A stretch of DNA of 64,000 nt from Perkinsela sp. CCAP 1560/9 (lineage: Eukaryota; Protista; Euglenozoa: Kinetoplastea). A model generated the notes under the pieces. It was given only the letters and a program-made list of their open reading frames with translations. It made no database searches and was not told the DNA's origin. Shown here piece by piece: positions 1,368-62,824 of the stretch. A program made the position numbers and the translations under genes. The number at the start of each line of letters is the position of its first letter. The stretch's first letter is position 1. The DNA lies in contig CBFFSA010000004.1 in NCBI GenBank assembly GCA_965644495.1, positions 868,001 to 932,000 on the forward strand, read 5' to 3'.

Positions 1368-1682
1368 ACATGTCGGGGCTCCTCCACATGCGAGGGGCTC
1401 CTCGTGTGTCACTCGCAGCCGCTCGTATAAATGCATATTGAATTATTAATAATATTAATGGGTACAGACCACTTATATTGCACCCACTTTCAAAATAATG
1501 ATATGAATGCATTGAAATGTTTTCTTGCGCAGCGTAACTTCACACACTTTATCTCATTTCCTCCTTCCGCCTACTTTACGTCAAAAAAATGTTGCAGTAT
1601 GCTTATAGTTCACCACATTACACGTCAAATGCCCATGCGCAGATAAAATGCCTGCGGGCAGATAAAATGCCACAATAAAAAA

Positions 1683-1754
1683 GCTTGGCGTCAGTGCCAC
1701 ATGGCAGTGGCGGGGAAGACCGCTAGGAGGTCCCATGTTGGACCATGCTGCCCC
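1683..1754 (-). ncRNA. Degenerate HDV-like ribozyme copy
   Basis: Minus strand reads GGGGCAG-CATGGTCCAACATGGG-ACC-TCCTAGC-GGT-CTTCCCC-GC-CAC-TGCCATGTGGCA-CTGA-CGCCAAGC, followed by a T-run. Confidence 0.55.
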
Positions 1755-2086
1755 ATGTTAGGGCTGTGGGAAATATTGAGAAGACTCCTAGTTTACCTGT
1801 CTGGAGGTAAGGCCCAACTTTGAACGTCTGTGAGCAAAGCCCAACTGTGGGTGTAGCCCTGAGACAGAATTATATTTTAGCGCCCCCGCGCACTGAAGGG
1901 AGTGGGGGCGCGTTCTCAGAACCAACGTTTGTCCCTTCCGCAGGATTGTGTACTTGTTTCCCTATGTTGTGTGACCGGGCGTGTGATCCAGTAGCTTTTT
2001 AGGTTATGCTGTCCACTTCAACTCTGTGGCACAGTTTGACCCAAAAAATAGAAAAGTGGGTGCAATATAAGTGGGCATTACCCATA

Positions 2087-3021
2087 TTAATAAACCCCCC
2101 ACAGCGAATAAGTCACCCCCCTCTTTTTTTGGTACAACGAGGCTTAGGGGGGTTGCTGCACAACTTTTTCGTTCAAAATTTTGAGATCCGCACGTTCCCG
2201 CTGTTTTTAGACCTCTTCACAGATAACAAATTAAAACTCATTTTTTTAATGAAGTTTTTGCATAGTCTTGCCAACATTACCTGAAAAATCTCATGTTCCT
2301 CGACCAGGGGGGGAGAAGGGGGTCAACATGAAAATGGTGTCACAGATCTTCGCTAGGGGAACGCGATCTCTCGATTGCAACAAAAATGATCATAAACAGA
2401 TAACAAACATTCAATTTGTCACGTGGTGGAATATTTGTCTTTGATTGGTTCTTTCTTGAAACAGTGATAAATCAACTTTTTTAAGCTGTCCCCTTTACTT
2501 TTTGCTTGAAGGGGCCTAAGGGGGTTAGGATATCATTTTCTCGTTCAAAATTCTGAGATCTACACGTTCCCACCATTTTTAGATCATTTTAGAAACTGAA
2601 AAAAAAAATTGTTTTTAGGTTCTATTTTTTTGCATCGTCATACCACACTAATTTAAGAAAACAAACACTCTGCGGACAGGGGGCACAAGTGGGTCAATAT
2701 TAAAAATAGCGGCAAAGATCTTTGCTAGGAGAACGAGATCTCTCGTTTGCAACAAAAATCAGCAAAAACGGACAGAAATAATTGATTTCCTCATGGGAGG
2801 AGAATATTTAATTAGTTAAAGTGTGAGAAATTGGTCTCTTGAAAAACGTGAAGAAAGTGATAATCCATCTATGGGATGCACGCATTTGAGAGTTTTGGTT
2901 CCATGCTATAACGCGCAAAATCTTTGTGTTGGGAACAGCAAAATGCAACAAAAATGAACTCAAACGGACACTTGACTGAAAAGTTAGAGAGGGTGACTTT
3001 TCGCTGTGGGGGGGTTATTAA
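2087..3021. mobile_element. Non-autonomous TIR element with an internal diverged tandem duplication (period about 370 bp)
   Basis: TIRs TTAATAAACCCCCCACAGCGAATAAGTCACCC / GGGTGACTTTTCGCTGTGGGGGGGTTATTAA with TA flanks; units about 2146-2440 and 2517-2810 share CGTTCAAAATTYTGAGATC and GATCTCTCGWTTGCAACAAAAAT. Confidence 0.8.
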
Positions 3022-3196
3022 TAATATTAATAATTTGATTTTTTGAAATAATGATAATTATTATTACAAAAATTATTATTACAGCTATGTTTCGCACAAC
3101 TCTATTCATCGCTTCATGAAAGCCATAAAATCGTAAAAAAAGACATTCACTCCACACTCCCACAACAAACCAACATATTTTTTCAACCTTCCCCCC

Positions 3197-23954: not shown

Positions 23955-24731
23955 ATGAAATCTACCCCCGCTCTACATCTTCGTATCCTGCTTCCTAAGC
24001 CCACATTACGGTATTACTACCACGGCAACCGGCAGCGTCAACTGGCCCAGATGCGTAGCCAGAGAATTTTTGCCGGTCGTCATCTTCCCTATCGAGCGCT
24101 CTTTGGACGTATCGACCATCTACTGGTGCAGCGTGCAGCGTTCTACCCCGGAAGTGGGCGGTTTAATCCAGCAGCATACGAACGACTTCGCTGGTGTCCG
24201 TTTACGCCCTACGTGCCGAGTTACTGGACGGACCAGAGAGTGTGGAGAGGCGCTGCAGAATACCCCGACGACGAGGAAAGCCGCGTCGCAATTGCACGCA
24301 AACTTTTTGAAGAGGGTGATTTAACGGAGTGGCAGGCGCGGATACAGAGAAGCACCTGCGCGCAGGTAGTGGATTTGTATTTAAAATTATTCCCACAAAA
24401 TGGGGAAAAGAAACCTTTGTGGCAAACTGGAACAGGCGGGACGGAGAATCTGCGCCCCTCTACGATGGCATTCCACGCGAAGACTGCTCTTGTTCGAGCG
24501 CGGGGCTTGGAAACGTTTTCGCAAAAGTTTTGTGTGGTAAGGAAACTATTGGAAAGTCGGTTGCTGGAGGTATGGGGAGGAATGCGTCCATCTACTTTTG
24601 AGCAGATAATACAGGCAGTGAGCGCTGAGTGTGCCACGGATCTTAACGAAGCGCTGGAGAGACGAAAGAGACTGCATGCTCTTCCGCGATATTTTAAAGC
24701 AGCAGAGTCGAGAGCCCTGAATGGCACTTAG
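23955..24731 (+). CDS. Hypothetical protein, probably mitochondrial
   Basis: 258-aa ORF with a basic presequence-like N-terminus. Confidence 0.7.
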   Translation: MKSTPALHLRILLPKPTLRYYYHGNRQRQLAQMRSQRIFAGRHLPYRALFGRIDHLLVQRAAFYPGSGRFNPAAYERLRWCPFTPYVPSYWTDQRVWRGAAEYPDDEESRVAIARKLFEEGDLTEWQARIQRSTCAQVVDLYLKLFPQNGEKKPLWQTGTGGTENLRPSTMAFHAKTALVRARGLETFSQKFCVVRKLLESRLLEVWGGMRPSTFEQIIQAVSAECATDLNEALERRKRLHALPRYFKAAESRALNGT

Positions 24732-34997: not shown

Positions 34998-35921
34998 ATG
35001 TTTTTTCACTTGAAAATCTTGTACTCTCGTCGTTTTTTCACACTCATTTTGGTTTCAATAGTTATGATTTTATTTGAAATGCTACACGTTATCTTACGGC
35101 TGCATAGTGCGGAGTCCTTACCTTTACGACCAAGTCGAGTGCGAGGCGCACAACTACCCCCGGAAATGCAGCTTAGCAAATTTGTACGCAATCTAACAAA
35201 AAAACATCCGACTTGGAGTGAAGAATTCCCAATCGCGTCATGGGAAGGAGTGCAGTGCTCATCGCCACGTCAAATACATACTGTAAGGTGGTGCAACATG
35301 GCCCTTTCTGGAGTTTTAAACTGGGATTATCTTCCGGATTCTCTCGTGCTCTTTGATATTTCTAGCGACTCTGTGACAACATATCCTAACATGTTAGCGG
35401 GCGAAGTACCGTTCTCACGATTTCCACCTAGCACGGAAGTCATTTTCCTTCATCGAAACTGCTTTGCTGGAAAGTTGGAGTTCTTCACATTTCCGCGCAA
35501 CCTTAGAAGTCTAAACCTAGCTCGGAATCAATTCACGGGAACAGGTTCCTTCCAAGAATTACCCCCTACATTGGATCATCTAAATATTTCTCATAATTTG
35601 CTTAAAGGCGAGCTTCTCCTTGATACACTGCCATTGAACCTTCAGACGCTTCAGCTTGCGGGCAACTTTTTCACTGGAGAAGTTCGCTGGCACACTCTAC
35701 CACGCTCCTTGATATCCGTGAGCGTGGGAGAAAATATGTTAACAGGGGAAATTGACTTTGGAGCAATGCCAGAAAATTTGAAGACCTTGAGTATACAAGC
35801 GAATGGGTTTTCCGGTCATTTTGACCACACAACTTGTCACCCAGCATTAAAAAGTGTCAATGCTCTCCGGAATCATTTCGTAAATATATCTCCCTATTTA
35901 CCTCTTGGATTTACCGTATGA
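34998..35921 (+). CDS. Leucine-rich repeat protein
   Basis: SRVRGAQLPPEMQL, WEGVQC and LRRs; true start may be a downstream ATG. Confidence 0.9.
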   Translation: MFFHLKILYSRRFFTLILVSIVMILFEMLHVILRLHSAESLPLRPSRVRGAQLPPEMQLSKFVRNLTKKHPTWSEEFPIASWEGVQCSSPRQIHTVRWCNMALSGVLNWDYLPDSLVLFDISSDSVTTYPNMLAGEVPFSRFPPSTEVIFLHRNCFAGKLEFFTFPRNLRSLNLARNQFTGTGSFQELPPTLDHLNISHNLLKGELLLDTLPLNLQTLQLAGNFFTGEVRWHTLPRSLISVSVGENMLTGEIDFGAMPENLKTLSIQANGFSGHFDHTTCHPALKSVNALRNHFVNISPYLPLGFTV

Positions 35922-36078
35922 CTAGCTGAGAATATTCAGTGAATTTGTTTTTACGATTGCGTGCATCTATTGCCCGTGCAACAATTTTTAGCTCATAAAC
36001 ATGTTCTTAGATAAATCTCGAGGAAAAACTAGTTCTATTTTTTGGAAGAAAAGATTTGCACCAAAGAATTTAGTATTT

Positions 36079-36304
36079 TAATATCCCCCTACTTATAGGG
36101 CTCCGTTTTTGGGCAAAACGCCCTGTTAAGGGGAGTACAAATAAAATTATTTAGAAAGAGCAATCGGCGCCCCTTCGCAACGATTTTTATCGTTGCTAAA
36201 CAAGGTCCTCCCTTTTGACATACATTAGGATGCTTGGGCTCTAGACAAAATGGCCCTATTAAGGTGGGGGTTGCGCGTAACCGTATTAAATAGTGGGGAT
36301 AGTA
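36079..36304. mobile_element. Possible degenerate MITE
   Basis: Imperfect TIRs TAATATCCCCCTACTTA / TAAATAGTGGGGATAGTA and inverted ATAGGGC/GCCCTAT subrepeats. Confidence 0.35.
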
Positions 36305-36386
36305 ATTTACAATTAATGCAAAAGTTGCATCGCAGGATTCAAGGTGTGATTCTGAATTCACTGTATGTTTTTAAATTTCACGAAAA

Positions 36387-37256
36387 ATGTTTCCGCTACT
36401 TTTCTACTTCGCGTGCATTCGTTTTTCGTCTGGATTTCTTGTAGACAGTAACCCTTCAAAACGGCGCAAACTTGGTCGAGTTAGCCCCAGCATCCTACCA
36501 CAGGAAATGCAATTTCCTCAGTTCGTGCGGCACTTACAAAATCCCCCTCCCTCTTGGTCACTTACTACCCCTACATGCGAGTGGGAACGTGTGACATGTG
36601 ACGCGGAAGGACGGCTTCGGTCGGTGTCATGGGATGCGATGGATCTCCGAGGCAATCTAAGCTGGAGCTATCTTCCACCAACGTGCCAATGCGTCTCGGC
36701 TGTGACAAATTTCTTATCCGGGGAACTTCTCCTAGGGGATCTTCCCTATGCCTTACGTGCTCTGAGCCTCACGGACAATGACTTAGTTGGTCCGCTGTAC
36801 TTAGCAGACGTCCCAGGTACGATGGAAATGCTCAATTTGAGCACAAACGCACACACAGGCGAAATTCATCTTGAATCTCTTCCAAGGAAGGTGAATTATC
36901 TTTCGCTTTCTGGAAACCGACTTACCGGACCATTAAATCTGACAAGCCTACCCCCGGCAATGGAATTATTATTTCTATCCTCGAATCGGTTTGAGGGCGC
37001 TGTAGATTTGAGGCAGCTGCCCCTCTCGCTCCGCGAACTGCACTTAGGAGAAAATTCTCTCTCCGGTTGCATCGTGCTTTCCGCTCTACCAGATAGCTTA
37101 GAAGTTCTTGCCATGAATTCCAACTCTATAAAGGGAAATGTTGAATTTGACAATATTTCCACATCTTTGCACACTTTAGATCTTACTGATACCGAAGTCT
37201 CCGGAACGGTACCACCCCACCTAGAATTTGTTGTCTGGATAGGGGAATCGCTGTAG
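36387..37256 (+). CDS. Leucine-rich repeat protein
   Basis: GRV..ILPQEMQF, PTCEWERVTC and LRRs. Confidence 0.9.
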   Translation: MFPLLFYFACIRFSSGFLVDSNPSKRRKLGRVSPSILPQEMQFPQFVRHLQNPPPSWSLTTPTCEWERVTCDAEGRLRSVSWDAMDLRGNLSWSYLPPTCQCVSAVTNFLSGELLLGDLPYALRALSLTDNDLVGPLYLADVPGTMEMLNLSTNAHTGEIHLESLPRKVNYLSLSGNRLTGPLNLTSLPPAMELLFLSSNRFEGAVDLRQLPLSLRELHLGENSLSGCIVLSALPDSLEVLAMNSNSIKGNVEFDNISTSLHTLDLTDTEVSGTVPPHLEFVVWIGESL

Positions 37257-37616
37257 TATCGTATGGATTTTCGATTAAAGAACACTGATGCGGGGCATTC
37301 ACTAACTCAGTTGAAAGGCATAGCTGTTTCTGTAGGATGCCAGGCACCCACACTGCTCATGCATGTTCTTGGGACAATTAATAAACAAAATATCTTTTTT
37401 TCGACTGTTGTTAAAATTTTGAACCGCCTACAAATCCTAGGAAATGTTCCTTTACATATTATTGAAAACATTGAAACGATGTTAAACATGAAAGTACGAA
37501 GACACAGGGTGGTAAAAACACAGTATGAGCCAAGTTACGTGATTTTCTTTTTAGCCTTTCTTTTTTTGCATATTCGCACGTAATTTACATGTACATTCTG
37601 TATATTCTGCATCGGA

Positions 37617-39000
37617 ATGAGTTTTAATTTATTTTCCTCACAGGAAAGCACTGGGATGCGTCGCGCAGGTAAAGTACGCGGATCTTTCTTACCGGAGGAA
37701 TATGACTTGTCTCTTTTCATTCAGAACATTCCGAAGCGTCATCGATCGTGGAGTACAAACGTACCCGCCTGTGAGTGGAGTGGTGTTAAGTGTGATCCAA
37801 CCATGCGTACTGTAACAGACCTGAACTGGAATCGTATGAAGCTCACAGGGTCTGTTGTTTGGTCACGACTTCCCCGACGGGTTGAAATATTAGATTTATC
37901 AGAAAATATCTTGAGTGGACCTCTATTTTTAGATCAACTCCCTACAACGCTTCACACTCTACATATTTTTCATAACATTCTCACCGGAGGACTAGAATGT
38001 CAGACATTGCATGGAGGGGCGCGCAATATTTATCTTGGTGACAACCAGTTTGAAGGAGAGGTAGATCTTACCTCTCTTCCTGTCACTTTACTTCGATTTA
38101 GATAAAGATACAGTTTCTGTACCTTGTTGGTACATTTTCCCTTTAGTTCATCTTTTCTTTCCCCGGCAACGGGCATAATCTTACTGTTTTATATGCCCGT
38201 TGCCGGCCGGCACTAAGGCCGAAACTGTCCCTCTTTCTCGGAGAAGTAGGGGACGCGCTTCCACCCCATCACCCCTCCCCGGCTCACTCCTTGAGTGGGT
38301 TTTCTTCCCTCCCCGGCTTTCTTCCCTTCGCGCCCTTTTCTCCCCGGGGAGCCATGCGCCATGGTGGCCTCCCTTGAGGACCACTGGGCGTGGCTCTGCC
38401 TCGTCTTATCGCGAGGCAGCGGTCGGTTGCAGTGCGCCCCTCCGGCTGCGTAAAGAGGTGGTGAGTTGCCTGGACCACCTCTACCGACTGGGACCGAGTC
38501 GGTTGCAGTGCGCCCCTCCGGCTGCGTAAAGAGAGGGCGAGTTGCCTGGACCCCCTCTACCGACAGAGTCCGAGCTAAACCCCCTTGGTGCGACATCCGT
38601 CAATACGGATTGTGCCGATGATATCGGCTGCGCATTAAGGGCTGTATCTCTGCGCCAACGAGCGCATGAACATCAAAAATTAAGTAATAATGACTTTTCT
38701 GGCGAAGTAAAATTGCATCTCTTGCCTCCATCTATGATTTCGCTCTCTTTGGGGCATAATCATTTCACTGGGCGCATTTATCTGTACTCCCTTCCAATTC
38801 AATTGGAATTTCTCTATTTACAAAGCAATGAATTTTATGGGAATGTCGATTTAAGCACTCTCCCTGTTGCTTTAAGAGGGCTTAATTTAGATGACAACCG
38901 TTTCGATGGTTTTGAGTGGGGCACACTGGTAGCTCAAGAATCTACTCAAGTTGTTGTTGGAACGCAGCGAGGAAAAGAATTAAAAATGACCACTGCATAA
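37617..39000 (+). pseudogene. LRR gene split by a 577-bp insertion
   Basis: Removing 38103-38679 gives in-frame VDLTSLPVTLLRFR|LSNNDFSG in exact LRR register. Confidence 0.85.
38103..38679. mobile_element. Unclassified GC-rich structured insertion with two 77-bp direct repeats
   Basis: Hairpin CCGGCAACGGGCATA/TATGCCCGTTGCCGG; repeats about 38422-38498 and 38499-38575; ends CATCAAAAA; no TSD beyond an AT junction ambiguity. Confidence 0.75.
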
Positions 39001-39238
39001 TAAAGGACATGTAGACACATTAAAAAAAACGAAACATGCACATTATGTATAGTACGTAGAGTATGTCATGTATTGCTGATACATGTAGTATATTGGAACT
39101 GCACTGCATATTGTAAATGATGCTTTCTAAGTGATGCTAATGATTCGGCAATTGGTTTCTCAAACGTAATATTAAGCTTCAGTAAAGTACATCAGGTCAG
39201 TTGTGTAGTGCATTTCTTTCTTGGCTTATATCACATTC

Positions 39239-40078
39239 ATGACTATGAAACGTTATTGCTCGAATTTTCCGGCTCGCATTTACTCGAGCGCGGACAGCGG
39301 ATCTGTGAGACAGCCTCAAAAACTTGGAAAGGTCCATTCTGCCGTGCTTCCCCTGGAAGTCCAATTTACGCAGTTCCTATCTAATGTAAGCAATTGGCAT
39401 TCGACGTGGAAAGCCGAAAACCATTTCCTGGAGTGGAGTGGGGTATCTGTTTTCGAAGGTGATATGCCCGATACGGGCATGCAGAGCCTCCCTGCGCCAC
39501 ATCTACGAGTTATATGGTGCTTGAAATCTTTATCTGGATCGCCACGATGGGAGCTTATACCTTCCGAGGTATTTCATCTGGACCTGTCGCAGAACAATTT
39601 AAAAGGTGGTCTACCTTTTTCGAGATTTCCAGAAACGCTGCTTTGGCTTAATTTCAATGAAAACTATTTTTCGGGAGAGATTGATTGGAGCAGTCTTCCA
39701 TCATATTTGAGCTTTATAAATATTTCGTTTAACGATCTCCGTGGAGCCGTGGATCTTACGAACCTCCCCGATACCCTTCAGTCACTCAGTCTTTCCGGGA
39801 ATAGATTTACAGGAAATGTGCAGCTGGGACATCTGCCGAAACGACTGATCACGTTGGAGCTTTCTCACAATAAGTTTGCAGGTGAGTTGGATCTTGGTGA
39901 CTTACCAGAGTCGTTGAGTTACGTCAGTTTGAACAACAATAAGTTCAATGCTTTAAAAGGAACACGATATCTGCCCATTACAATGAGTCGACTGTATCTC
40001 ATGGAAAATTGCTTTAAAGAGAAACCGAAGGATCATCTTCCTGCTTACGTGCGTTGGTCGCCTCAATTAGTGGGTTAA
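39239..40078 (+). CDS. Leucine-rich repeat protein
   Basis: GKV..VLPLEVQF, EWSGVS and LRRs. Confidence 0.9.
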   Translation: MTMKRYCSNFPARIYSSADSGSVRQPQKLGKVHSAVLPLEVQFTQFLSNVSNWHSTWKAENHFLEWSGVSVFEGDMPDTGMQSLPAPHLRVIWCLKSLSGSPRWELIPSEVFHLDLSQNNLKGGLPFSRFPETLLWLNFNENYFSGEIDWSSLPSYLSFINISFNDLRGAVDLTNLPDTLQSLSLSGNRFTGNVQLGHLPKRLITLELSHNKFAGELDLGDLPESLSYVSLNNNKFNALKGTRYLPITMSRLYLMENCFKEKPKDHLPAYVRWSPQLVG

Positions 40079-41685: not shown

Positions 41686-42039
41686 CACCACATTAGTACA
41701 TAACGTCGTGACTGGTAAATATCGGTAACAGTGTCTGGGTCTATAGCACACTCCTGAAGGCTTCTAATCTATTTTTAGAACTTTGAGACATGTCATGATA
41801 AATTTATGAAGTTAATACGAAGTGCTGTAGCCCGCCCAGTAAGATAGGTATTGGGTCAATGTTGCCTAATCTCTCTTACTGGGGGTATGCTTCTCCTTCT
41901 CTTTTCTCCCAACACTTTTGATAAGTTTCCTTATTTCTGAAAACGTGTTAAAACGCTTATTTAGGTTACCCCCGAGGCCCCCGGCACGCGGACATCCACT
42001 CTCTACTCCCTGTACGCTCTCCCGACCCAATTATCTCTA

Positions 42040-42108
42040 ACTGGGGAGTATTCTACTGCGGGGTCTTTTACTGGGGTATCTTTTACTGGGGTGTCTTTTA
42101 CTGGGGGA
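42040..42108. repeat. 15-bp degenerate tandem repeat (about 4.5 units)
   Basis: ACTGGGGTRTCTTTT units upstream of TrxR. Confidence 0.75.
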
Positions 42109-42274
42109 GTCTACGGTAATGAACCGATCACCGACAATGCTTTTGTTATTGATCCTACTCTGACCGGTATCGAAACGACACGATCTTTTTATCCTTCCTC
42201 TATACCTTCCTTTTTTACCTCTTTTACCTCCCGCGCTCGGTTTCTCCCCCCCACCACGCTCACCCCACCACCCC

Positions 42275-43852
42275 ATGACCTCACCCGACACCCCACCGAC
42301 TTCCTACGACCTCCTGGTCATCGGCGGCGGCTCCGGGGGCATTGCCTGCGCCCGGAGGGCAGCCGCCCTGGGCGCCCACGTCGGCCTCTGTGACTTCGTC
42401 GCCCCCTCCCCCACCCTTGGCACCTCCTGGGGTCTCGGCGGGACCTGTGTGAATGTGGGCTGTATCCCAAAGAAACTCATGCACAATGCCGCACGGCTGG
42501 GAGGGGAGGCCCACCACGCGGCCTGCGCATTCGGCTGGGGCAACGACGCCTCCCCCCCGACCCCCCAGGCCCACACCTGGGACGTGCTGCGGCAAAATGT
42601 ACTCCTGCACATCAAATCGTTAAATTTTGGGTATAATGTCGAGCTGCGAAAAGCGGGGGTGAAATATCACAACGCGCTGGCCTCCATACGAAATGTAAAA
42701 AGCGGCGCCCCCTACGAGATTGCGTTACGGAGTAAAGCCGGGGAGGCCTCGACGGTGTGGGCGGCTCGGGTTGTGCTGGCGATGGGGGGACGTCCGACGC
42801 TCCCCGCGGAGTGTCCTGGGGCGCGGGCGTATGGTATCACCTCGGATGATTTGTTTCGGCTAGCGCGGGACCCCGGGAGGTGCTGCGTGGTGGGGGCGTC
42901 CTATGTGGCGCTGGAGTGTGCGGGATTCCTGCGGGGGTTGGGGAAGGAAGTGGTGGTGCTGATCCGGTCGATTCCGCTACGGGGGTATGACCAGCAGATG
43001 GCGCAAAAGATCGTGGAGTTTATGGAGACCGTTGAGGGGGTGCGATTTGTACGTCAAGCGGTGCCGGTGTCGGTAGAAGTGGTGAAACCGGAAGCGGGAA
43101 ATTCTACTCCAGATGAGATTGCTGGTCCTGAACGTCGAAAAGTAACTTGGCGTCATGCCGATGGTACCACCGGAGCTGAGATATTTGATACGGTCTTGTT
43201 CGCCATTGGACGCACCCCGGAGACAACTAAGGTAGGATTGCCCCTGGAGGCCGTAGACGTAAAAAATGGAAAAGTACTCGTTGATTCTGTAGATCAAGTC
43301 GTGGGAGTCCATAACGTGTACGCAATTGGAGATATCGCGCAAGGGGGGCTGGAGCTCACTCCGGTCGCCATACGTCAAGGACAGCTTCTCGCAGATCGTC
43401 TTTTTGGAGGCCGTACGGAAGCGCTTTGTTTTGAGAAGGTCCCCACAACAGTCTTTACCCCCTTGGAATATGGTTGTGTTGGGCTAAGTGAGGAACGGGC
43501 AACGGAAATCTACGGCGAAGATGCTATAGAAGTCTATCACAGCTCATTTACCCCCCTGGAGTGGACATTGGTACATTCCTACCCGGCTAACACGTGTTAC
43601 ATTAAAATAATCACTACGCGCCCCCTTCGGGGCACTGGTGACCACGGTGAACGTGTAGTTGGGTTTCATATTCTGTCCCCCAACGCAGGTGAGATCACAC
43701 AAGGAGTAGCGGTGGCCTTGTGTGCTAATGCAACGAAACAGCATTTTGACACTGCTTTAGGTATTCATCCCACGGTGGCTGAGGAAATGATTGGCTTGCA
43801 TGTTACGAAGCGTTCCGGGAAGGATCCGGAAAAATCGGGTTGCTGAGGTTAA
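42275..43852 (+). CDS. TXNRD: Selenocysteine-containing thioredoxin reductase (large, animal-type); UGA 43844-43846 read as Sec, stop TAA 43850-43852
   Basis: GGGSGG FAD motif, CVNVGC redox centre, GASYVALEC, GIHPTVAE, C-terminus SGC-TGA-GGT-TAA = GCUG. Confidence 0.93.
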
Positions 43853-43853
43853 T

Positions 43854-43975
43854 GGAGACAAAGTTGGTAGCTATTCGTGGTGCTTCTGGGGCGTGCGCAA
43901 GTAAGGTACTTTTTAAGACCATACACCACACCCTTAAGCGACCACGCTGAGATCGCTATCCCCAATTTTGTCTCC
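43854..43975 (+). other. Long stem-loop immediately 3' of the TrxR stop
   Basis: GGAGACAAAGTTGG/CCAATTTTGTCTCC, TAGC/GCTA, CGTGGT/ACCACG, GCTT/AAGC. Confidence 0.75.
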
Positions 43976-44020
43976 CGATTTTTTCTTCTTTGGTTGCGTC
44001 TACAGATGACGCACTTCTCT

Positions 44021-44067
44021 GTGAAGAAGTCGGAGGAAAGGGCATCCCGCTCTCTCCGGTTTCGGAT
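44021..44067 (+). promoter_or_regulatory. Eukaryotic SECIS element, type II, GUGA core
   Basis: GTGAA core, helix GAAGTCGGAG/CTCCGGTTTC (10 bp), unpaired GAA, ministem AGGGC/GCTCT, GGAT core partner. Confidence 0.8.
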
Positions 44068-44419
44068 ATCAACTTTAACTTAAATTTCTGAACTTTGGAG
44101 ATTTAACTTATTTTTTAATTCTATAGGTATTCTAGTGCATCTCTATCTGAAGAGATGGCATTTTATGTTGACGTGTGATAATAGCTAAGGCATATACAAT
44201 ATGCTCGGTGTTTCTTTTGTGATCTAATCATTTACTTGCAAGAGTAGGCACTTACGTATGCATGTCATCGATTGATCTTTATTCTACGCTTTGAATGAGC
44301 CAGGGTGCAAACCCGACAGTTGGTTTAACTATTGTATCGTTTCGTTTAAGAAGTAAAAAGTATACAGCAAATTACTTATACATTTAGTTACTTGTACATT
44401 TAGATATTGCATCAAGAAT

Positions 44420-45196
44420 ATGCTACTTTCCCTTTTAGCACCGGCTGAAATACTTGCACAGGATTATCGTCCCTCAAAGGTTCGCGGTGCTCTGCTTCCG
44501 GAGGAAAACGATCTGCTTCGCGTGCTACAGAATACATCTTTTATTATGCCGTCCTGGACAAATGAAGTCCCTGCATGCGATTGGCGTCGCGTGTCTTGTG
44601 ACGACAAGAGACGTGTTTCGCGTATCTCTTGGTATGAGCTCCATTTGATCGGTGAGCTGCATTGGTCATTTTTTCCAATGCACTTAAAGTCTATTGATCT
44701 CAGTTCTAACTTACTACATGGACAGGTACCTTTTGATGTGCTACCTGTGGAACTTGAAACACTTAATTTAAGCGGCAATAAATTTTATGGAAAGCTTGAC
44801 TTCACCTGCTTGCCACCCACCCTTCGTGCTCTTCTTCTGAGACAGAACGAATTTGACGGGGCCGTCGCATTACCGACAATGCCGAAGAGCCTACAAAAAT
44901 TATCACTGTCGATGAATAAGTTCACTGGGACGCTTGATTTTTCAAACCTCCCACCGAATCTTACGATGCTTAGTCTCGATGCAAATGCCTTTACAGGTTC
45001 TGTTTCATTTCCCAATTTGCCTAAGACACTTCGATGGCTGAATTTGACAGGAAATTGTCTTAGTGGAACCGTTGATCTGCGTTCATATTTGGGACGCCAG
45101 ATAACGATTAAGTTATCCTATAATGCATTCGATGAAATTTTGCCGTCAGATCTGCCCGTGAATTTTTATGTTCGTGGACAACAAGTGCGTATATGA
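44420..45196 (+). CDS. Leucine-rich repeat protein
   Basis: SKVRGALLPEE, PACDWRRVSC and LRRs. Confidence 0.9.
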   Translation: MLLSLLAPAEILAQDYRPSKVRGALLPEENDLLRVLQNTSFIMPSWTNEVPACDWRRVSCDDKRRVSRISWYELHLIGELHWSFFPMHLKSIDLSSNLLHGQVPFDVLPVELETLNLSGNKFYGKLDFTCLPPTLRALLLRQNEFDGAVALPTMPKSLQKLSLSMNKFTGTLDFSNLPPNLTMLSLDANAFTGSVSFPNLPKTLRWLNLTGNCLSGTVDLRSYLGRQITIKLSYNAFDEILPSDLPVNFYVRGQQVRI

Positions 45197-48201: not shown

Positions 48202-48942
48202 ATGAAGCACGCTTATTTATTCAGTTGTCACGATTCAAGATCGTCCGAACAAAGTTCTAATTCTCGTGCCAGCAGAGTCGGAAGAGCAAATTTACCACCT
48301 GAATATGAACTTGTGCAACTTATTGAGGATATCGGAAAAAAACATTCCACGTGGAATCCATCAGTCCCTGCTTGTGAGTGGAAAGGTGTCAAGTGTGAGG
48401 GCAGTTGTATTACTAAGATAGATTGGATAGGACAAAGTCTTTTCGGGTCCATTCGATGGCCCTCGCTTCCGCAGTCACTGCAGATCTTTCTAGTAAGTAC
48501 GAACCAGCTTATGGGGACTGTCGAACTCGATGCCCTGCCCTCGGGTATTCACCATTTCAATGTGATGGACAATGCTTTCAGTGGGAAATTGGAGCTTCAA
48601 CACTTACCCCAGACGGTAAAGCGGCTTAACTTTAGTTACAACCAATTTGAAGGAGAGGTTGACCTAAGTCACCTTCCCGCAGATCTTGTGATGCTCCATT
48701 TAGGCTACAACCACTTGTCTGGTCCTATAAATTTGACTAACCTTCCACCTAATCTAGTCGACTTATCTTTGCCTAAGAATCAGTTTTCGGGTACCGCAAT
48801 CATGAATAACTTGCCAAAAAGCTTACAGGCACTAGATGTACATGACAATGAACAATTATGTGGTGAAGTGGACGCCTCAACGTTGCCAACCATTTTAAAC
48901 AGCTTTCTTTATTGTGATACTAAAATAATTCTTCAAGAATGA
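48202..48942 (+). CDS. Leucine-rich repeat protein
   Basis: SRVGRANLPPEYEL, PACEWKGVKC and LRRs. Confidence 0.9.
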   Translation: MKHAYLFSCHDSRSSEQSSNSRASRVGRANLPPEYELVQLIEDIGKKHSTWNPSVPACEWKGVKCEGSCITKIDWIGQSLFGSIRWPSLPQSLQIFLVSTNQLMGTVELDALPSGIHHFNVMDNAFSGKLELQHLPQTVKRLNFSYNQFEGEVDLSHLPADLVMLHLGYNHLSGPINLTNLPPNLVDLSLPKNQFSGTAIMNNLPKSLQALDVHDNEQLCGEVDASTLPTILNSFLYCDTKIILQE

Positions 48943-61260: not shown

Positions 61261-61468
61261 AAACACGAATTTTGCTCAGCCGTTACCCTCATCACATAAT
61301 TTCGCAACAGTACTCAAATGCTCGAGGCAGACCAAACACTTCCTTGAGTAATCGGGAGAGTGACAATAAACAAAAATATCTCCGTAAAACACATTAAACA
61401 AGAAGACACCAGTACCATTGCAATCACAAAATCTAAAGATACTTCATTTCTTTTTACATCCGACTCTT

Positions 61469-62824
61469 ATGCCGACATTCACACACCTCCCCGTGACCTT
61501 GACATCCGATGAACCACGACGCGGGCGCGTTCGCGGTGCCGTCATGCCCGCCGAGTACTACCTGGAGCGTTTTATCCAGCACCTTAACAACCCGCACCGC
61601 TCCTGGCACTCCCGTCGTGCGGCGTGTCGTTGGGACGGCATCACGTGCTCCGATGCGGGAGTCCTGGAGGACATGGCATGGAACGAACGTGAGCTCTCCG
61701 GGAACCTCTCCTGGAGCTACATCCCCAACACCCTGCTCTATCTCGACCTCAAAGGGAATGAACTCGACGGGGGCCTTTCCCTCCCCGAGCTCCCCCCCAC
61801 CCTGGAAACCCTTTACGGGGACCATAACCAATTTACGGGGTGCCTTGATTTACGCTCTCTCCCCGGCAACCTCTCCGATATCCGTCTCGGGAACAATCAT
61901 CTCCACGGGGAGCTCGAGCTCACCTCGCTGCCCCCTCCGCTTACCTATCTCGGGTTAAACCGTAACCGTTTCGAGGGGGGGATCTCCCTCGAGGCCCTTC
62001 CCCCGTTGTTGGAGTACATCCGACTGGATCATAATCAATTCACCGGACCCGTGGAGCTGCGGAATTTGCCCAAGACCCTGCAGGATTTGTATCTGGACCA
62101 CAACGCGCTGAGCGGTCACCTGTGCCTCAGTGCGCTCCCCCCGTCGCTGGAGTATGTCCGGCTGGAGCATAACGCGTTCGAGGGAGCGGTGGATTTCACC
62201 CGACTCCCGGAGGCGCTGAGTGATATCTACGTGGACCATAACCGGTTAAGCGGGGCGTTGGATTTGACCCATCTCCCGCCTCGATTGGCGTATGCGCACC
62301 TGGAGAAGAATGAGTTTAGTGGAGGGTTGGGGCTGGATAACCTTCCGCCGGGTTTATCTTTTCTTCGGGTCGATCATAATAATTTGACCGGGGGGCTGGG
62401 TTTGCGACATCTGCCACTGGAGATGGAGACGCTTTATGTGAACCATAACGAGTTCGAGGGGGGCGTGGATCTAACCGGGCTACCTGGCCAACTTCTGGAT
62501 CTGCGGGTGGACCACAATAGGCTGAGTGGGCCGGTGCAATTCGAGATACTTCCCGGTGGGCTGCAGATGCTTCGACTGGACCATAATCGGCTCACAGGGC
62601 CGGTGAATTTGGCGAACCTGCCGCCCGCCCTTACATCGCTTCGGTTAGAGTATAATCAACTCGACGGGATCGCGGATCTGCGACATTTGCCCAACGGAAT
62701 GCTAGAGGTGAACTTGCGAAATAATGACTTCGTGGCGTTTGAGAAACCAGAGATTCCCCCTTTGCTGTGCGTATTCCGATTGGGATCATCACACTCCAAA
62801 AAAAAGAGGACTGTGAAGCGATGA
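61469..62824 (+). CDS. Leucine-rich repeat protein, long form (about 14 repeats)
   Basis: GRVRGAVMPAEYYL, AACRWDGITC and tandem 24-aa LRRs. Confidence 0.92.
   Translation: MPTFTHLPVTLTSDEPRRGRVRGAVMPAEYYLERFIQHLNNPHRSWHSRRAACRWDGITCSDAGVLEDMAWNERELSGNLSWSYIPNTLLYLDLKGNELDGGLSLPELPPTLETLYGDHNQFTGCLDLRSLPGNLSDIRLGNNHLHGELELTSLPPPLTYLGLNRNRFEGGISLEALPPLLEYIRLDHNQFTGPVELRNLPKTLQDLYLDHNALSGHLCLSALPPSLEYVRLEHNAFEGAVDFTRLPEALSDIYVDHNRLSGALDLTHLPPRLAYAHLEKNEFSGGLGLDNLPPGLSFLRVDHNNLTGGLGLRHLPLEMETLYVNHNEFEGGVDLTGLPGQLLDLRVDHNRLSGPVQFEILPGGLQMLRLDHNRLTGPVNLANLPPALTSLRLEYNQLDGIADLRHLPNGMLEVNLRNNDFVAFEKPEIPPLLCVFRLGSSHSKKKRTVKR

What the first reader, a model, noticed from the sequence alone, without database searches (positions are those of the whole stretch)
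42275..44067. Selenocysteine thioredoxin reductase with a SECIS in a kinetoplastid
Seen: the ORF track stops at SGC, but the DNA reads GGT TGC TGA GGT TAA, the Gly-Cys-Sec-Gly-stop tail of large TrxRs. The N-terminal CVNVGC centre is present, and a type II SECIS (GUGAA/GGAU core, 10-bp helix, AA bulge, ministem) lies at 44021-44067. Known: trypanosomatids lack TrxR, rely on trypanothione reductase, and their described selenoproteins are SelK, SelT and SelTryp. Inference: this kinetoplastid, whose identity is supported by MRP1 on the same contig, runs a selenium-dependent thioredoxin system, either retained from an ancestor or acquired, e.g. from an amoebozoan host. I cannot verify its status in bodonids or Perkinsela.
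Basis: partly seen in the sequence, partly recalled or inferred. Interest (0 to 1): 0.85.

Follow-up and report, generated by a model that had tools for sequence, protein, structure and literature searches.

The report
Selenocysteine thioredoxin reductase gene, kinetoplastid
This is a real gene for a large thioredoxin reductase whose apparent TGA stop almost certainly encodes selenocysteine, but it is an inherited, expected feature of kinetoplastids outside the trypanosomatids, not a surprise.

Summary
Observation confirmed. ORF 42275-43846 is a high-Mr thioredoxin reductase (TIGR01438 570 bits, cut-off 476). It has CVNVGC and ends Gly-Cys-TGA-Gly-TAA.

All eight kinetoplastid-type relatives examined, including a second paralogue in this genome, read Cys-TGA-Gly-stop. 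Their Gly and stop codons differ synonymously, so the two codons after TGA are translated.

The same architecture occurs in six related 3'UTRs. Helix II shows strong covariation: 9 of 10 pairs have two-sided changes and 94% of cells pair. The window's copy lacks a clear helix I and gets no Rfam hit. A model built without it scores it at only E=0.03.

The genome has tRNA-Sec, SepSecS and an SPS2 gene that itself carries an in-frame TGA. It also has a trypanothione-reductase-like gene.

The tree places the gene with Perkinsela and prokinetoplastid TrxRs, inside a clade that contains Euglena. This supports vertical retention. No named amoebozoan sequence was in the tree, so host transfer was not directly tested.

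Butenko et al. 2020 already reported TrxR in all kinetoplastids they studied except trypanosomatids. I found no paper describing the Sec tail or the SECIS.

The scan had already found the paralogue on another contig (s1-673031).

The parts
42275..43852 (+). Coding sequence of a cytosolic-type large thioredoxin reductase (paralogue a): 523 codons, then TGA (Sec), GGT (Gly), TAA (stop)
   Evidence: ORF. Pfam Pyr_redox_2 plus Pyr_redox_dim. TIGR01438 TGR 570.2 bits against a cut-off of 475.85. PDB TGR/TXNRD matches at 1e-143, against 1e-52 for trypanothione reductase.
42446..42463 (+). N-terminal redox-active disulfide CVNVGC (residues 58-63)
   Evidence: Read directly from the sequence and its translation.
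43844..43846 (+). In-frame TGA read as selenocysteine, the penultimate codon of the Gly-Cys-Sec-Gly tail
   Evidence: Eight of eight related loci read Cys-TGA-Gly-stop, with Gly codons GGT/GGG/GGA/GGC and stops TAA/TAG.
43854..43975 (+). Long stem-loop starting 7 nt after the TGA, a candidate Sec-redefinition (SRE-like) element
   Evidence: MFE -53.6 kcal/mol, z = -6.0, 0 of 200 shuffles as stable. It is the most structured post-stop region of 29 ORFs in the window; the next best is -35.1. A hairpin starts 6-7 nt after the TGA in all 7 loci that have a 3'UTR.
44021..44067 (+). Type II SECIS element: GUGA/GGAU core, 10-bp helix II, AAA bulge, 3-bp ministem. It lies 175 nt after the TGA.
   Evidence: A model built without this sequence finds it as the top hit of the window, 19.6 bits, E=0.03. 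Helix II covaries across 7 loci. The paralogue's element matches Rfam SECIS_1 at 34.8 bits against a gathering score of 35.
43992..44074 (+). Possible weak, atypical helix I (GGUUG 43992-96 with CAACU 44070-74), enclosing an extra small hairpin. Inferred only.
   Evidence: Pairing found by eye; the constrained fold did not pick it. The six relatives have clear helix I stems of 5-11 bp.

Best explanation
The gene encodes a cytosolic-type, high-molecular-weight NADPH thioredoxin reductase. Its C-terminal redox centre is Gly-Cys-Sec-Gly. The ribosome reads TGA at 43844-46 as selenocysteine because a SECIS element in the 3'UTR (44021-44067) recruits the Sec-specific factors. The large stem-loop that starts 7 nt after the TGA probably helps by acting at the ribosome when UGA is in the A site. 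Electrons would flow NADPH -> FAD -> CVNVGC -> the Cys-Sec pair of the other subunit -> thioredoxin. The gene was inherited vertically within Euglenozoa. It has a second, probably mitochondrial, paralogue in the same genome and coexists with a trypanothione-reductase-like gene. Shown here: the sequence features, homology, conservation of the tail, SECIS covariation and the Sec machinery genes. Inferred: actual Sec insertion, the role of the stem-loop, enzyme activity, localisation, and that the mRNA extends past the SECIS.
For: TrxR identity. Tail and CVNVGC. Cys-TGA-Gly-stop in 8 of 8 loci with synonymous variation after the TGA. Shared SECIS layout in 7 loci. Helix II: 93.9% of cells paired against 53.5% in shuffles, 9 of 10 pairs with two-sided changes, 0 of 500 shuffles reach the covariation score, slid controls 35-51%. 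Leave-one-out model finds the window's element as the best hit of the window. A genome-wide scan with the 7-sequence model returns only the two TrxR 3'UTRs in 21 Mb. The paralogue's element aligns to Rfam SECIS_1. tRNA-Sec 62.8 bits (cut-off 47), with ARAGORN calling SeC with anticodon TCA. SepSecS 363 bits. SPS2 with Sec in the L-R-G-U-G-C-K-V-P motif. Phylogeny. Post-TGA hairpins.
Against: Rfam gives no SECIS hit for the window's 3'UTR even at E<=10. The leave-one-out score is modest (E=0.03) and almost tied with a chance hit at 39758-39815 on the minus strand, which lacks the UGA core. The window's element has no clear helix I, unlike all six relatives. The core has G, not A, before UGA. 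The covariation alignment was fitted to the model. The PSTK model found nothing, and eEFSec and SBP2 were not searched.
Confidence: 0.85

Rival explanations
1. TGA is a genuine stop. The enzyme ends at ...Ser-Gly-Cys without Sec, as a truncated or low-activity TrxR, and the SECIS-like hairpin is chance.
For: No Rfam SECIS hit. The fold z-score is only -1.69. There is no helix I. Gene callers and the NCBI annotation of Perkinsela end the protein at the Cys.
Against: Gly plus stop directly after the TGA is kept in 8 of 8 loci while the codons themselves vary. The SECIS layout and helix II covariation are shared by 7 loci. The genome keeps tRNA-Sec, SepSecS and a Sec-containing SPS2.
Confidence: 0.05
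2. The gene was acquired horizontally, for example from an amoebozoan host, or the locus is host or contaminant DNA joined in by mis-assembly.
For: The 5' half of the gene is richer in G+C (0.58-0.64) than its neighbours (about 0.40-0.46). Relatives of this organism (Perkinsela) live inside amoebae.
Against: The nearest sequences are kinetoplastid (Perkinsela, PhM-4), not metazoan or algal. Both paralogues sit in a starred clade with Euglena. Free-living prokinetoplastids PhM-4 and PhF-6 have the gene. The gene lies in a same-strand gene array on a 1.13-Mb contig. Butenko 2020 infers an ancestral euglenozoan TrxR. No named amoebozoan TrxR was in my tree, so that donor was not tested directly.
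Confidence: 0.04
3. The gene is a Sec-TrxR by descent, but this copy's SECIS is degenerating through loss of helix I. Sec insertion would then be inefficient and most product truncated.
For: Helix I is clear in six relatives but not here. The window's element scores lowest but one among the seven under the model. The UGA-SECIS distance (175 nt) is the longest of the set.
Against: The ORF is intact. The tail, core, helix II, AAA and ministem are all kept. The post-TGA stem-loop is the strongest of the set. A distant 5-bp helix I is possible (43992-96 with 44070-74).
Confidence: 0.06

Closest known systems
Perkinsela sp. CCAP 1560/4 'thioredoxin reductase' (P0002; locus L001) and prokinetoplastid PhM-4 TXNRD (P0003)
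   Same: 56% identity over the full length, the same clade in the tree, the same Cys-TGA-Gly-stop tail, and (shown for Perkinsela; only the protein was seen for PhM-4) the same GUGAA...GGAU SECIS layout and a hairpin 6 nt after the TGA.
   Different: Perkinsela has Asn-Cys-Sec-Gly where the window has Gly-Cys-Sec-Gly. Its SECIS has a clear helix I and lies 77 nt, not 175 nt, after the TGA. Gene neighbours differ: Sdh5-BUD31-S26e in Perkinsela, LRR genes here.
Animal TXNRD1/TXNRD2 and flatworm TGR (PDB 1h6v, 3ean, 1zdl, 2x8c)
   Same: The same fold family, CVNVGC, the GCUG tail and a SECIS-dependent penultimate UGA. PDB matches at 1e-140 to 1e-143 over the full length. About 50% identity to animal TXNRD/TGR sequences in the protein database.
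   Different: No glutaredoxin domain. The SECIS core is GUGA rather than AUGA. There is a strong stem-loop directly after the UGA, which to my knowledge is not described for animal TXNRD mRNAs.
Trypanosomatid selenoproteins SelK, SelT and SelTryp (Lobanov et al. 2006, PMC1557815)
   Same: The same phylum-level Sec machinery, intronless genes and a SECIS in the 3'UTR a few hundred nt from the UGA.
   Different: A different protein family. Trypanosomatids have no TrxR. This genome adds two TrxRs and a Sec-SPS2 to the repertoire known from trypanosomatids.
Trypanothione reductase
   Same: The same flavoprotein disulfide reductase superfamily. A TryR-like gene coexists in this genome (C1:860658-862109).
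   Different: The window's protein scores 185 bits on TIGR01423 against a cut-off of 738, and it has the C-terminal Sec extension that TryR lacks.
SEPN1-type Sec redefinition element (SRE; Howard et al. 2005, from memory)
   Same: A stable stem-loop beginning about 6 nt 3' of the Sec UGA.
   Different: Here the UGA is two codons from the true stop, so the hairpin lies in the 3'UTR. There is no sequence similarity and function is untested.

Membership tests
High-Mr thioredoxin reductase / TGR subfamily (TIGR01438) | Whole-protein score over the curated cut-off, and better than GR, TryR or lipoamide dehydrogenase models | tested here: met
   570.2 bits against a cut-off of 475.85. The next models score GR 347 and TryR 185. 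PDB TGR/TXNRD 1e-143, GR 1e-67, TryR 1e-52.
High-Mr thioredoxin reductase / TGR subfamily (TIGR01438) | Pyr_redox_2 FAD/NADPH domain plus Pyr_redox_dim interface domain | tested here: met
   PF07992 at 1.8e-46 and PF02852 at 2.6e-23.
High-Mr thioredoxin reductase / TGR subfamily (TIGR01438) | N-terminal redox-active CVNVGC | tested here: met
   Residues 58-63.
High-Mr thioredoxin reductase / TGR subfamily (TIGR01438) | C-terminal Gly-Cys-Sec-Gly followed by a stop | tested here: met
   GGT TGC TGA GGT TAA, conserved in 8 of 8 loci. That TGA is decoded as Sec is inferred.
High-Mr thioredoxin reductase / TGR subfamily (TIGR01438) | NADPH-dependent reduction of thioredoxin that depends on selenium | not testable with these tools
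   Needs an enzyme assay or 75Se labelling.
Eukaryotic SECIS element, type II | Kink-turn core: (A/G)UGA on the 5' side and GA on the 3' side | tested here: met
   GUGA at 44021-24 and GGAU at 44064-67. The GA on each side of the core is invariant across the 7 loci. The base before UGA is G rather than the usual A.
Eukaryotic SECIS element, type II | Helix II of about 9-11 bp between the core and the conserved A's, kept by compensatory change | tested here: met
   10 bp in the window. 93.9% of cells paired, 9 of 10 pairs with two-sided changes, 0 of 500 shuffles as high. The alignment was fitted to the model.
Eukaryotic SECIS element, type II | Unpaired AA(A) followed by a ministem | tested here: met
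   AAA at 44037-39 and GGG/CCC at 44040-48. AAA is present in 6 of 7 loci and AA in the seventh.
Eukaryotic SECIS element, type II | Helix I closing the internal loop below the core | tested here: inconclusive
   The constrained fold finds none next to the core in the window. Six relatives have 5-11 bp. A distant 5-bp pairing is possible.
Eukaryotic SECIS element, type II | Match to Rfam SECIS_1 (RF00031) at its gathering score | tested here: not met
   No hit for the window at E<=10 or on locus L018. The paralogue scores 34.8 against 35.
Eukaryotic SECIS element, type II | Lies within the mature 3'UTR of the selenoprotein mRNA | not testable with these tools
   It is on the right strand, 175 nt after the TGA and 350 nt before the next ATG.
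Sec-decoding organism | tRNA-Sec with anticodon UCA | tested here: met
   RF01852 62.8 bits against 47. ARAGORN calls tRNA-SeC with anticodon tca.
Sec-decoding organism | SepSecS and selenophosphate synthetase | tested here: met
   PF05889 362.9 bits. TIGR00476 207 bits against 125, with an in-frame TGA.
Sec-decoding organism | PSTK, eEFSec, SBP2 | tested here: inconclusive
   TIGR03575 (PSTK) gave no hit, but the model is stringent. eEFSec and SBP2 were not searched.
Trypanothione reductase (TIGR01423) | Score over the curated cut-off | tested here: not met
   185.4 bits against 738.1. The gene is not a TryR.

The most novel reading that the evidence does not exclude
Kinetoplastid TrxR mRNAs may use a lineage-specific two-part recoding signal. 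One part is a SECIS with a non-AUGA core: GUGA here, GGGA and GCGA in two relatives. The other is an obligatory stem-loop 6-7 nt after a penultimate UGA. That stem-loop would be an SRE-type element placed in the 3'UTR, letting Sec insertion compete with termination only two codons before the true stop. In the window's copy, the unusually large 122-nt stem-loop would compensate for a SECIS that has lost helix I.
Probability: 0.25. Interest if true: 0.55.

Novelty: new member of a known kind. Interest (0 to 1): 0.38.

Why it matters
The finding corrects a mis-ended gene model. The same truncation at the Sec codon is present in the public Perkinsela annotation. It also shows that the selenoproteome of early-branching kinetoplastids is larger than the SelK/SelT/SelTryp set known from trypanosomatids: it includes two Sec-TrxRs and a Sec-SPS2. 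That fits the published picture that trypanosomatids lost the thioredoxin reductase system after trypanothione took over. It also implies they lost their most selenium-dependent enzyme at the same step. The conserved hairpin next to the UGA and the non-AUGA SECIS cores are small additions for people who build selenoprotein gene finders.

Tried and rejected
- **Rfam scan of 43800-44420 at E<=10.** No SECIS family matched. The weak snR40, lncRNA and DUF805b hits are chance.
- **MAFFT alignments of the SECIS set (A1, A2).** They mis-registered the 3' strand, so I did not use them. I bootstrapped a covariance model from two sequences instead.
- **First 2-sequence model R1.** It could not separate the window's element from noise: 11.3 against 11.2 bits.
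- **Model hits at window 39758-39815 (-), 24342-24380 (+) and L007:3039-3099.** All rejected. They lack the UGA core or lie across the stop codon.
- **Alternative SECIS using the AUGA at 44005-08.** Rejected by eye: only a 6-bp hairpin and no properly placed AA.
- **SPS2 3'UTR (L011).** Neither my model nor Rfam found a SECIS there. It remains unlocated.
- **PSTK model TIGR03575.** No hit.
- **MRP1 on the window's contig.** Not found. The only Pfam MRP match is on contig C6.
- **Organism name.** Could not be determined.
- **Handling of the stop.** The protein was searched only as the piece before the TGA.

Full report
**The observation**

The window reads GGT TGC TGA GGT TAA at 43838-43852. 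The mechanical ORF 42275-43846 ends ...KSGC. The translation contains GGTCVNVGCIPKK, with CVNVGC at residues 58-63.

Pfam finds Pyr_redox_2 and Pyr_redox_dim. The protein passes NCBIfam TIGR01438, the thioredoxin and glutathione reductase subfamily, at 570 bits against a cut-off of 476. It scores only 185 bits on the trypanothione reductase model, whose cut-off is 738. Against solved structures the best matches are flatworm TGR and mammalian TXNRD1/2 at about 1e-140. Glutathione reductases score 1e-67 and trypanothione reductases 1e-52. So the gene is a large thioredoxin reductase, not a trypanothione reductase.

**Is the TGA a selenocysteine codon?**

I searched only the piece before the TGA. 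The nearest proteins are:
- a Logan transcript, 58% identity;
- Perkinsela sp. CCAP 1560/4 'thioredoxin reductase', 56%;
- a prokinetoplastid PhM-4 transcript, 56%;
- a Perkinsela-like ENA contig, 55%.

All of these are recorded as ending in Cys. I fetched their DNA, plus the DNA of a second paralogue in this genome and its relatives. Every one of the eight loci reads Cys-TGA-Gly-stop. The Gly codon varies (GGT, GGG, GGA, GGC) and the stop varies (TAA, TAG). Keeping 'Gly then stop' while the codons drift is the signature of translated sequence. This is the strongest single argument that the TGA is decoded.

**The SECIS**

- GUGA, then A;
- a 10-nt strand, then G and AAA;
- a 3-bp ministem;
- the complementary 10-nt strand, then GGAU.

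The free fold returns that helix and ministem, but its energy is unremarkable (z = -1.69) and Rfam gives no SECIS hit. The evidence is comparative. Six related 3'UTRs have the same layout with quite different helix sequences.

A covariance model built from four relatives, without the window, finds 44016-44073 as the best hit in the 64-kb window. The score is only 19.6 bits, E=0.03, and is nearly tied with a chance hit that lacks the core.

On the structure-aware alignment of the seven elements, 93.9% of helix II cells pair, against 53.5% in shuffles and 35-51% when the partners are slid. Nine of ten pairs show changes on both sides, and no shuffle reaches the covariation score. That alignment was fitted to the model, which favours the structure.

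The 7-sequence model, run over the whole 21-Mb genome, returns only the two TrxR 3'UTRs. The paralogue's element aligns to Rfam SECIS_1 at 34.8 bits, against a gathering score of 35, with helix I, core, helix II, AAA and ministem all in register.

The weak point is helix I. All six relatives have a clear helix I of 5-11 bp, and the window's element does not. A distant 5-bp pairing (43992-96 with 44070-74) is possible but is inferred only.

**A second element**

All seven loci that have a 3'UTR carry a hairpin beginning 6-7 nt after the TGA. In the window it is a 122-nt stem-loop at 43854-43975, with MFE -53.6 kcal/mol and z = -6.0. It is by far the most structured post-stop region among 29 ORFs of the window; the next best is -35.1. 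A helix starting at that offset occurs after only 2 of the 28 other ORFs. This spacing resembles the Sec redefinition elements described next to some animal Sec codons (from memory). Its function here is inferred. The scan noted this stem-loop separately (s1-704968).

**Sec machinery and redox context**

The genome has the following:
- a tRNA-Sec, 62.8 bits against 47, which ARAGORN calls SeC with anticodon TCA;
- SepSecS, 363 bits;
- a selenophosphate synthetase whose active-site motif reads L-R-G-TGA-G-C-K-V-P, so SPS2 is itself a selenoprotein here.

The PSTK model found nothing. I did not search for eEFSec or SBP2.

A trypanothione-reductase-like gene coexists at C1:860658-862109. It scores 548 bits, below the trypanosomatid-tuned cut-off. 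It is 57% identical to PhM-4, 55% to Euglena and 45-49% to trypanosomatid enzymes.

A second TrxR lies at C1 (locus L007). It is 538 aa, starts MLLRS..., and ends Pro-Gly-Cys-TGA-Gly-TAG. It is probably the mitochondrial isoform; that is inference. An independent ENA assembly carries it with the same TGA and SECIS.

**Origin**

In a maximum-likelihood tree the window's protein groups with PhM-4, Perkinsela and the Logan sequence. The second paralogue forms a fully supported sister clade with PhM-4, PhF-6 and Perkinsela-like sequences. Both lie in a starred clade that includes Euglena gracilis, apart from animal, choanoflagellate and haptophyte enzymes.

The gene sits in a same-strand gene array on a 1.13-Mb contig. 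This supports vertical retention with an old duplication. It gives no support to transfer from an amoebozoan host or to mis-assembly. No named amoebozoan sequence was in the tree, so that donor was not tested directly.

The organism is a kinetoplastid outside the trypanosomatids. On both TrxR trees it sits nearer to the Perkinsela side of the prokinetoplastids. I could not name it. A Pfam MRP gene exists in the genome but on contig C6, not on the window's contig.

**What is already known**

Butenko et al. 2020 (PMC7052976) searched TR, GR and TrxR across Euglenozoa. They state that TrxRs were absent only from trypanosomatids, and they infer an ancestral thioredoxin system that was lost stepwise. 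That paper does not mention selenocysteine.

The trypanosomatid selenoproteome is SelK, SelT and SelTryp (PMC1557815, PMC12153298). My searches of the held library found no paper describing Sec-type TrxR or its SECIS in bodonids, prokinetoplastids or Perkinsela. This library is not the whole literature.

An earlier follow-up in this scan reached the same reading for the paralogue on another contig (s1-673031). I re-examined that locus myself.

**Verdict**

The claimed surprise rests on extending a trypanosomatid trait to all kinetoplastids.

This is a new member of a known kind. It has modest added value in four respects:
- the gene models, including the public Perkinsela one, are truncated at the Sec codon;
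- the early kinetoplastid selenoproteome includes two TrxRs and SPS2;
- the SECIS cores are non-AUGA;
- a conserved hairpin sits next to the UGA.

Noticed in passing
L011 (G000:C8:178295-182110), minus strand, TGA at about L011 2284-2286: The selenophosphate synthetase (SPS2) gene has an in-frame TGA in the active-site motif L-R-G-U-G-C-K-V-P, so it is itself a selenoprotein here. To my knowledge the trypanosomatid enzyme has Cys at this position. Neither my model nor Rfam located its SECIS.
   Followed up: partly
L007 (G000:C1:260468-265000) 1462-3084; SECIS at L007 3127-3179: A second Sec-type TrxR paralogue of 538 aa with an MLLRS N-terminus. It ends Pro-Gly-Cys-TGA-Gly-TAG and has a canonical-looking GUGA SECIS that scores 34.8 bits on Rfam SECIS_1. 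An independent ENA assembly (ERZ24900291, L019) carries the same gene, 3613 of 3617 bases identical.
   Followed up: yes
L005 (G000:C8:164975-168059) 870-1586: tRNA-Sec sits at the end of a cluster of six tRNA genes (Leu, Gly, Glu, Arg, Ile, SeC). It is about 13 kb from the SPS2 gene on the same contig.
   Followed up: no
L003 4634-4689 and L012 3197-3254: Two relatives have SECIS cores that depart further from the consensus. The Perkinsela-like TrxR-a has GGGA and an ENA TrxR-b contig has GCGA, in place of GUGA. Helix II, the A-rich bulge and GGAU are kept. The L012 contig has about 2x coverage, so an error is possible there.
   Followed up: partly
L001 4537-4557 (Perkinsela LFNC01000462.1): The public Perkinsela 'thioredoxin reductase' protein ends ...KGNC. 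The DNA continues TGA GGA TAG, so the annotation is truncated at the Sec codon. The tail there is Asn-Cys-Sec-Gly, not Gly-Cys-Sec-Gly.
   Followed up: yes
window 42000-43000: The 5' half of the TrxR gene and its upstream 200 nt are markedly richer in G+C (0.58-0.64) than the surrounding array (about 0.40-0.46). The upstream region is a C/T-rich tract.
   Followed up: no
window 34998-40078, 44420-45196, 48202-48942, 61418-62821: The TrxR gene is embedded in an array of small leucine-rich-repeat genes, all on the + strand. All ORFs of 200 aa or more that look like genes in the window are on the + strand.
   Followed up: partly
L006 (G000:C1:859158-863609) 1471-2970: The trypanothione-reductase-like gene is closest to PhM-4 (57%) and Euglena (55%) and is below the TIGR01423 cut-off. 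Whether it reduces trypanothione or glutathione was not examined.
   Followed up: partly
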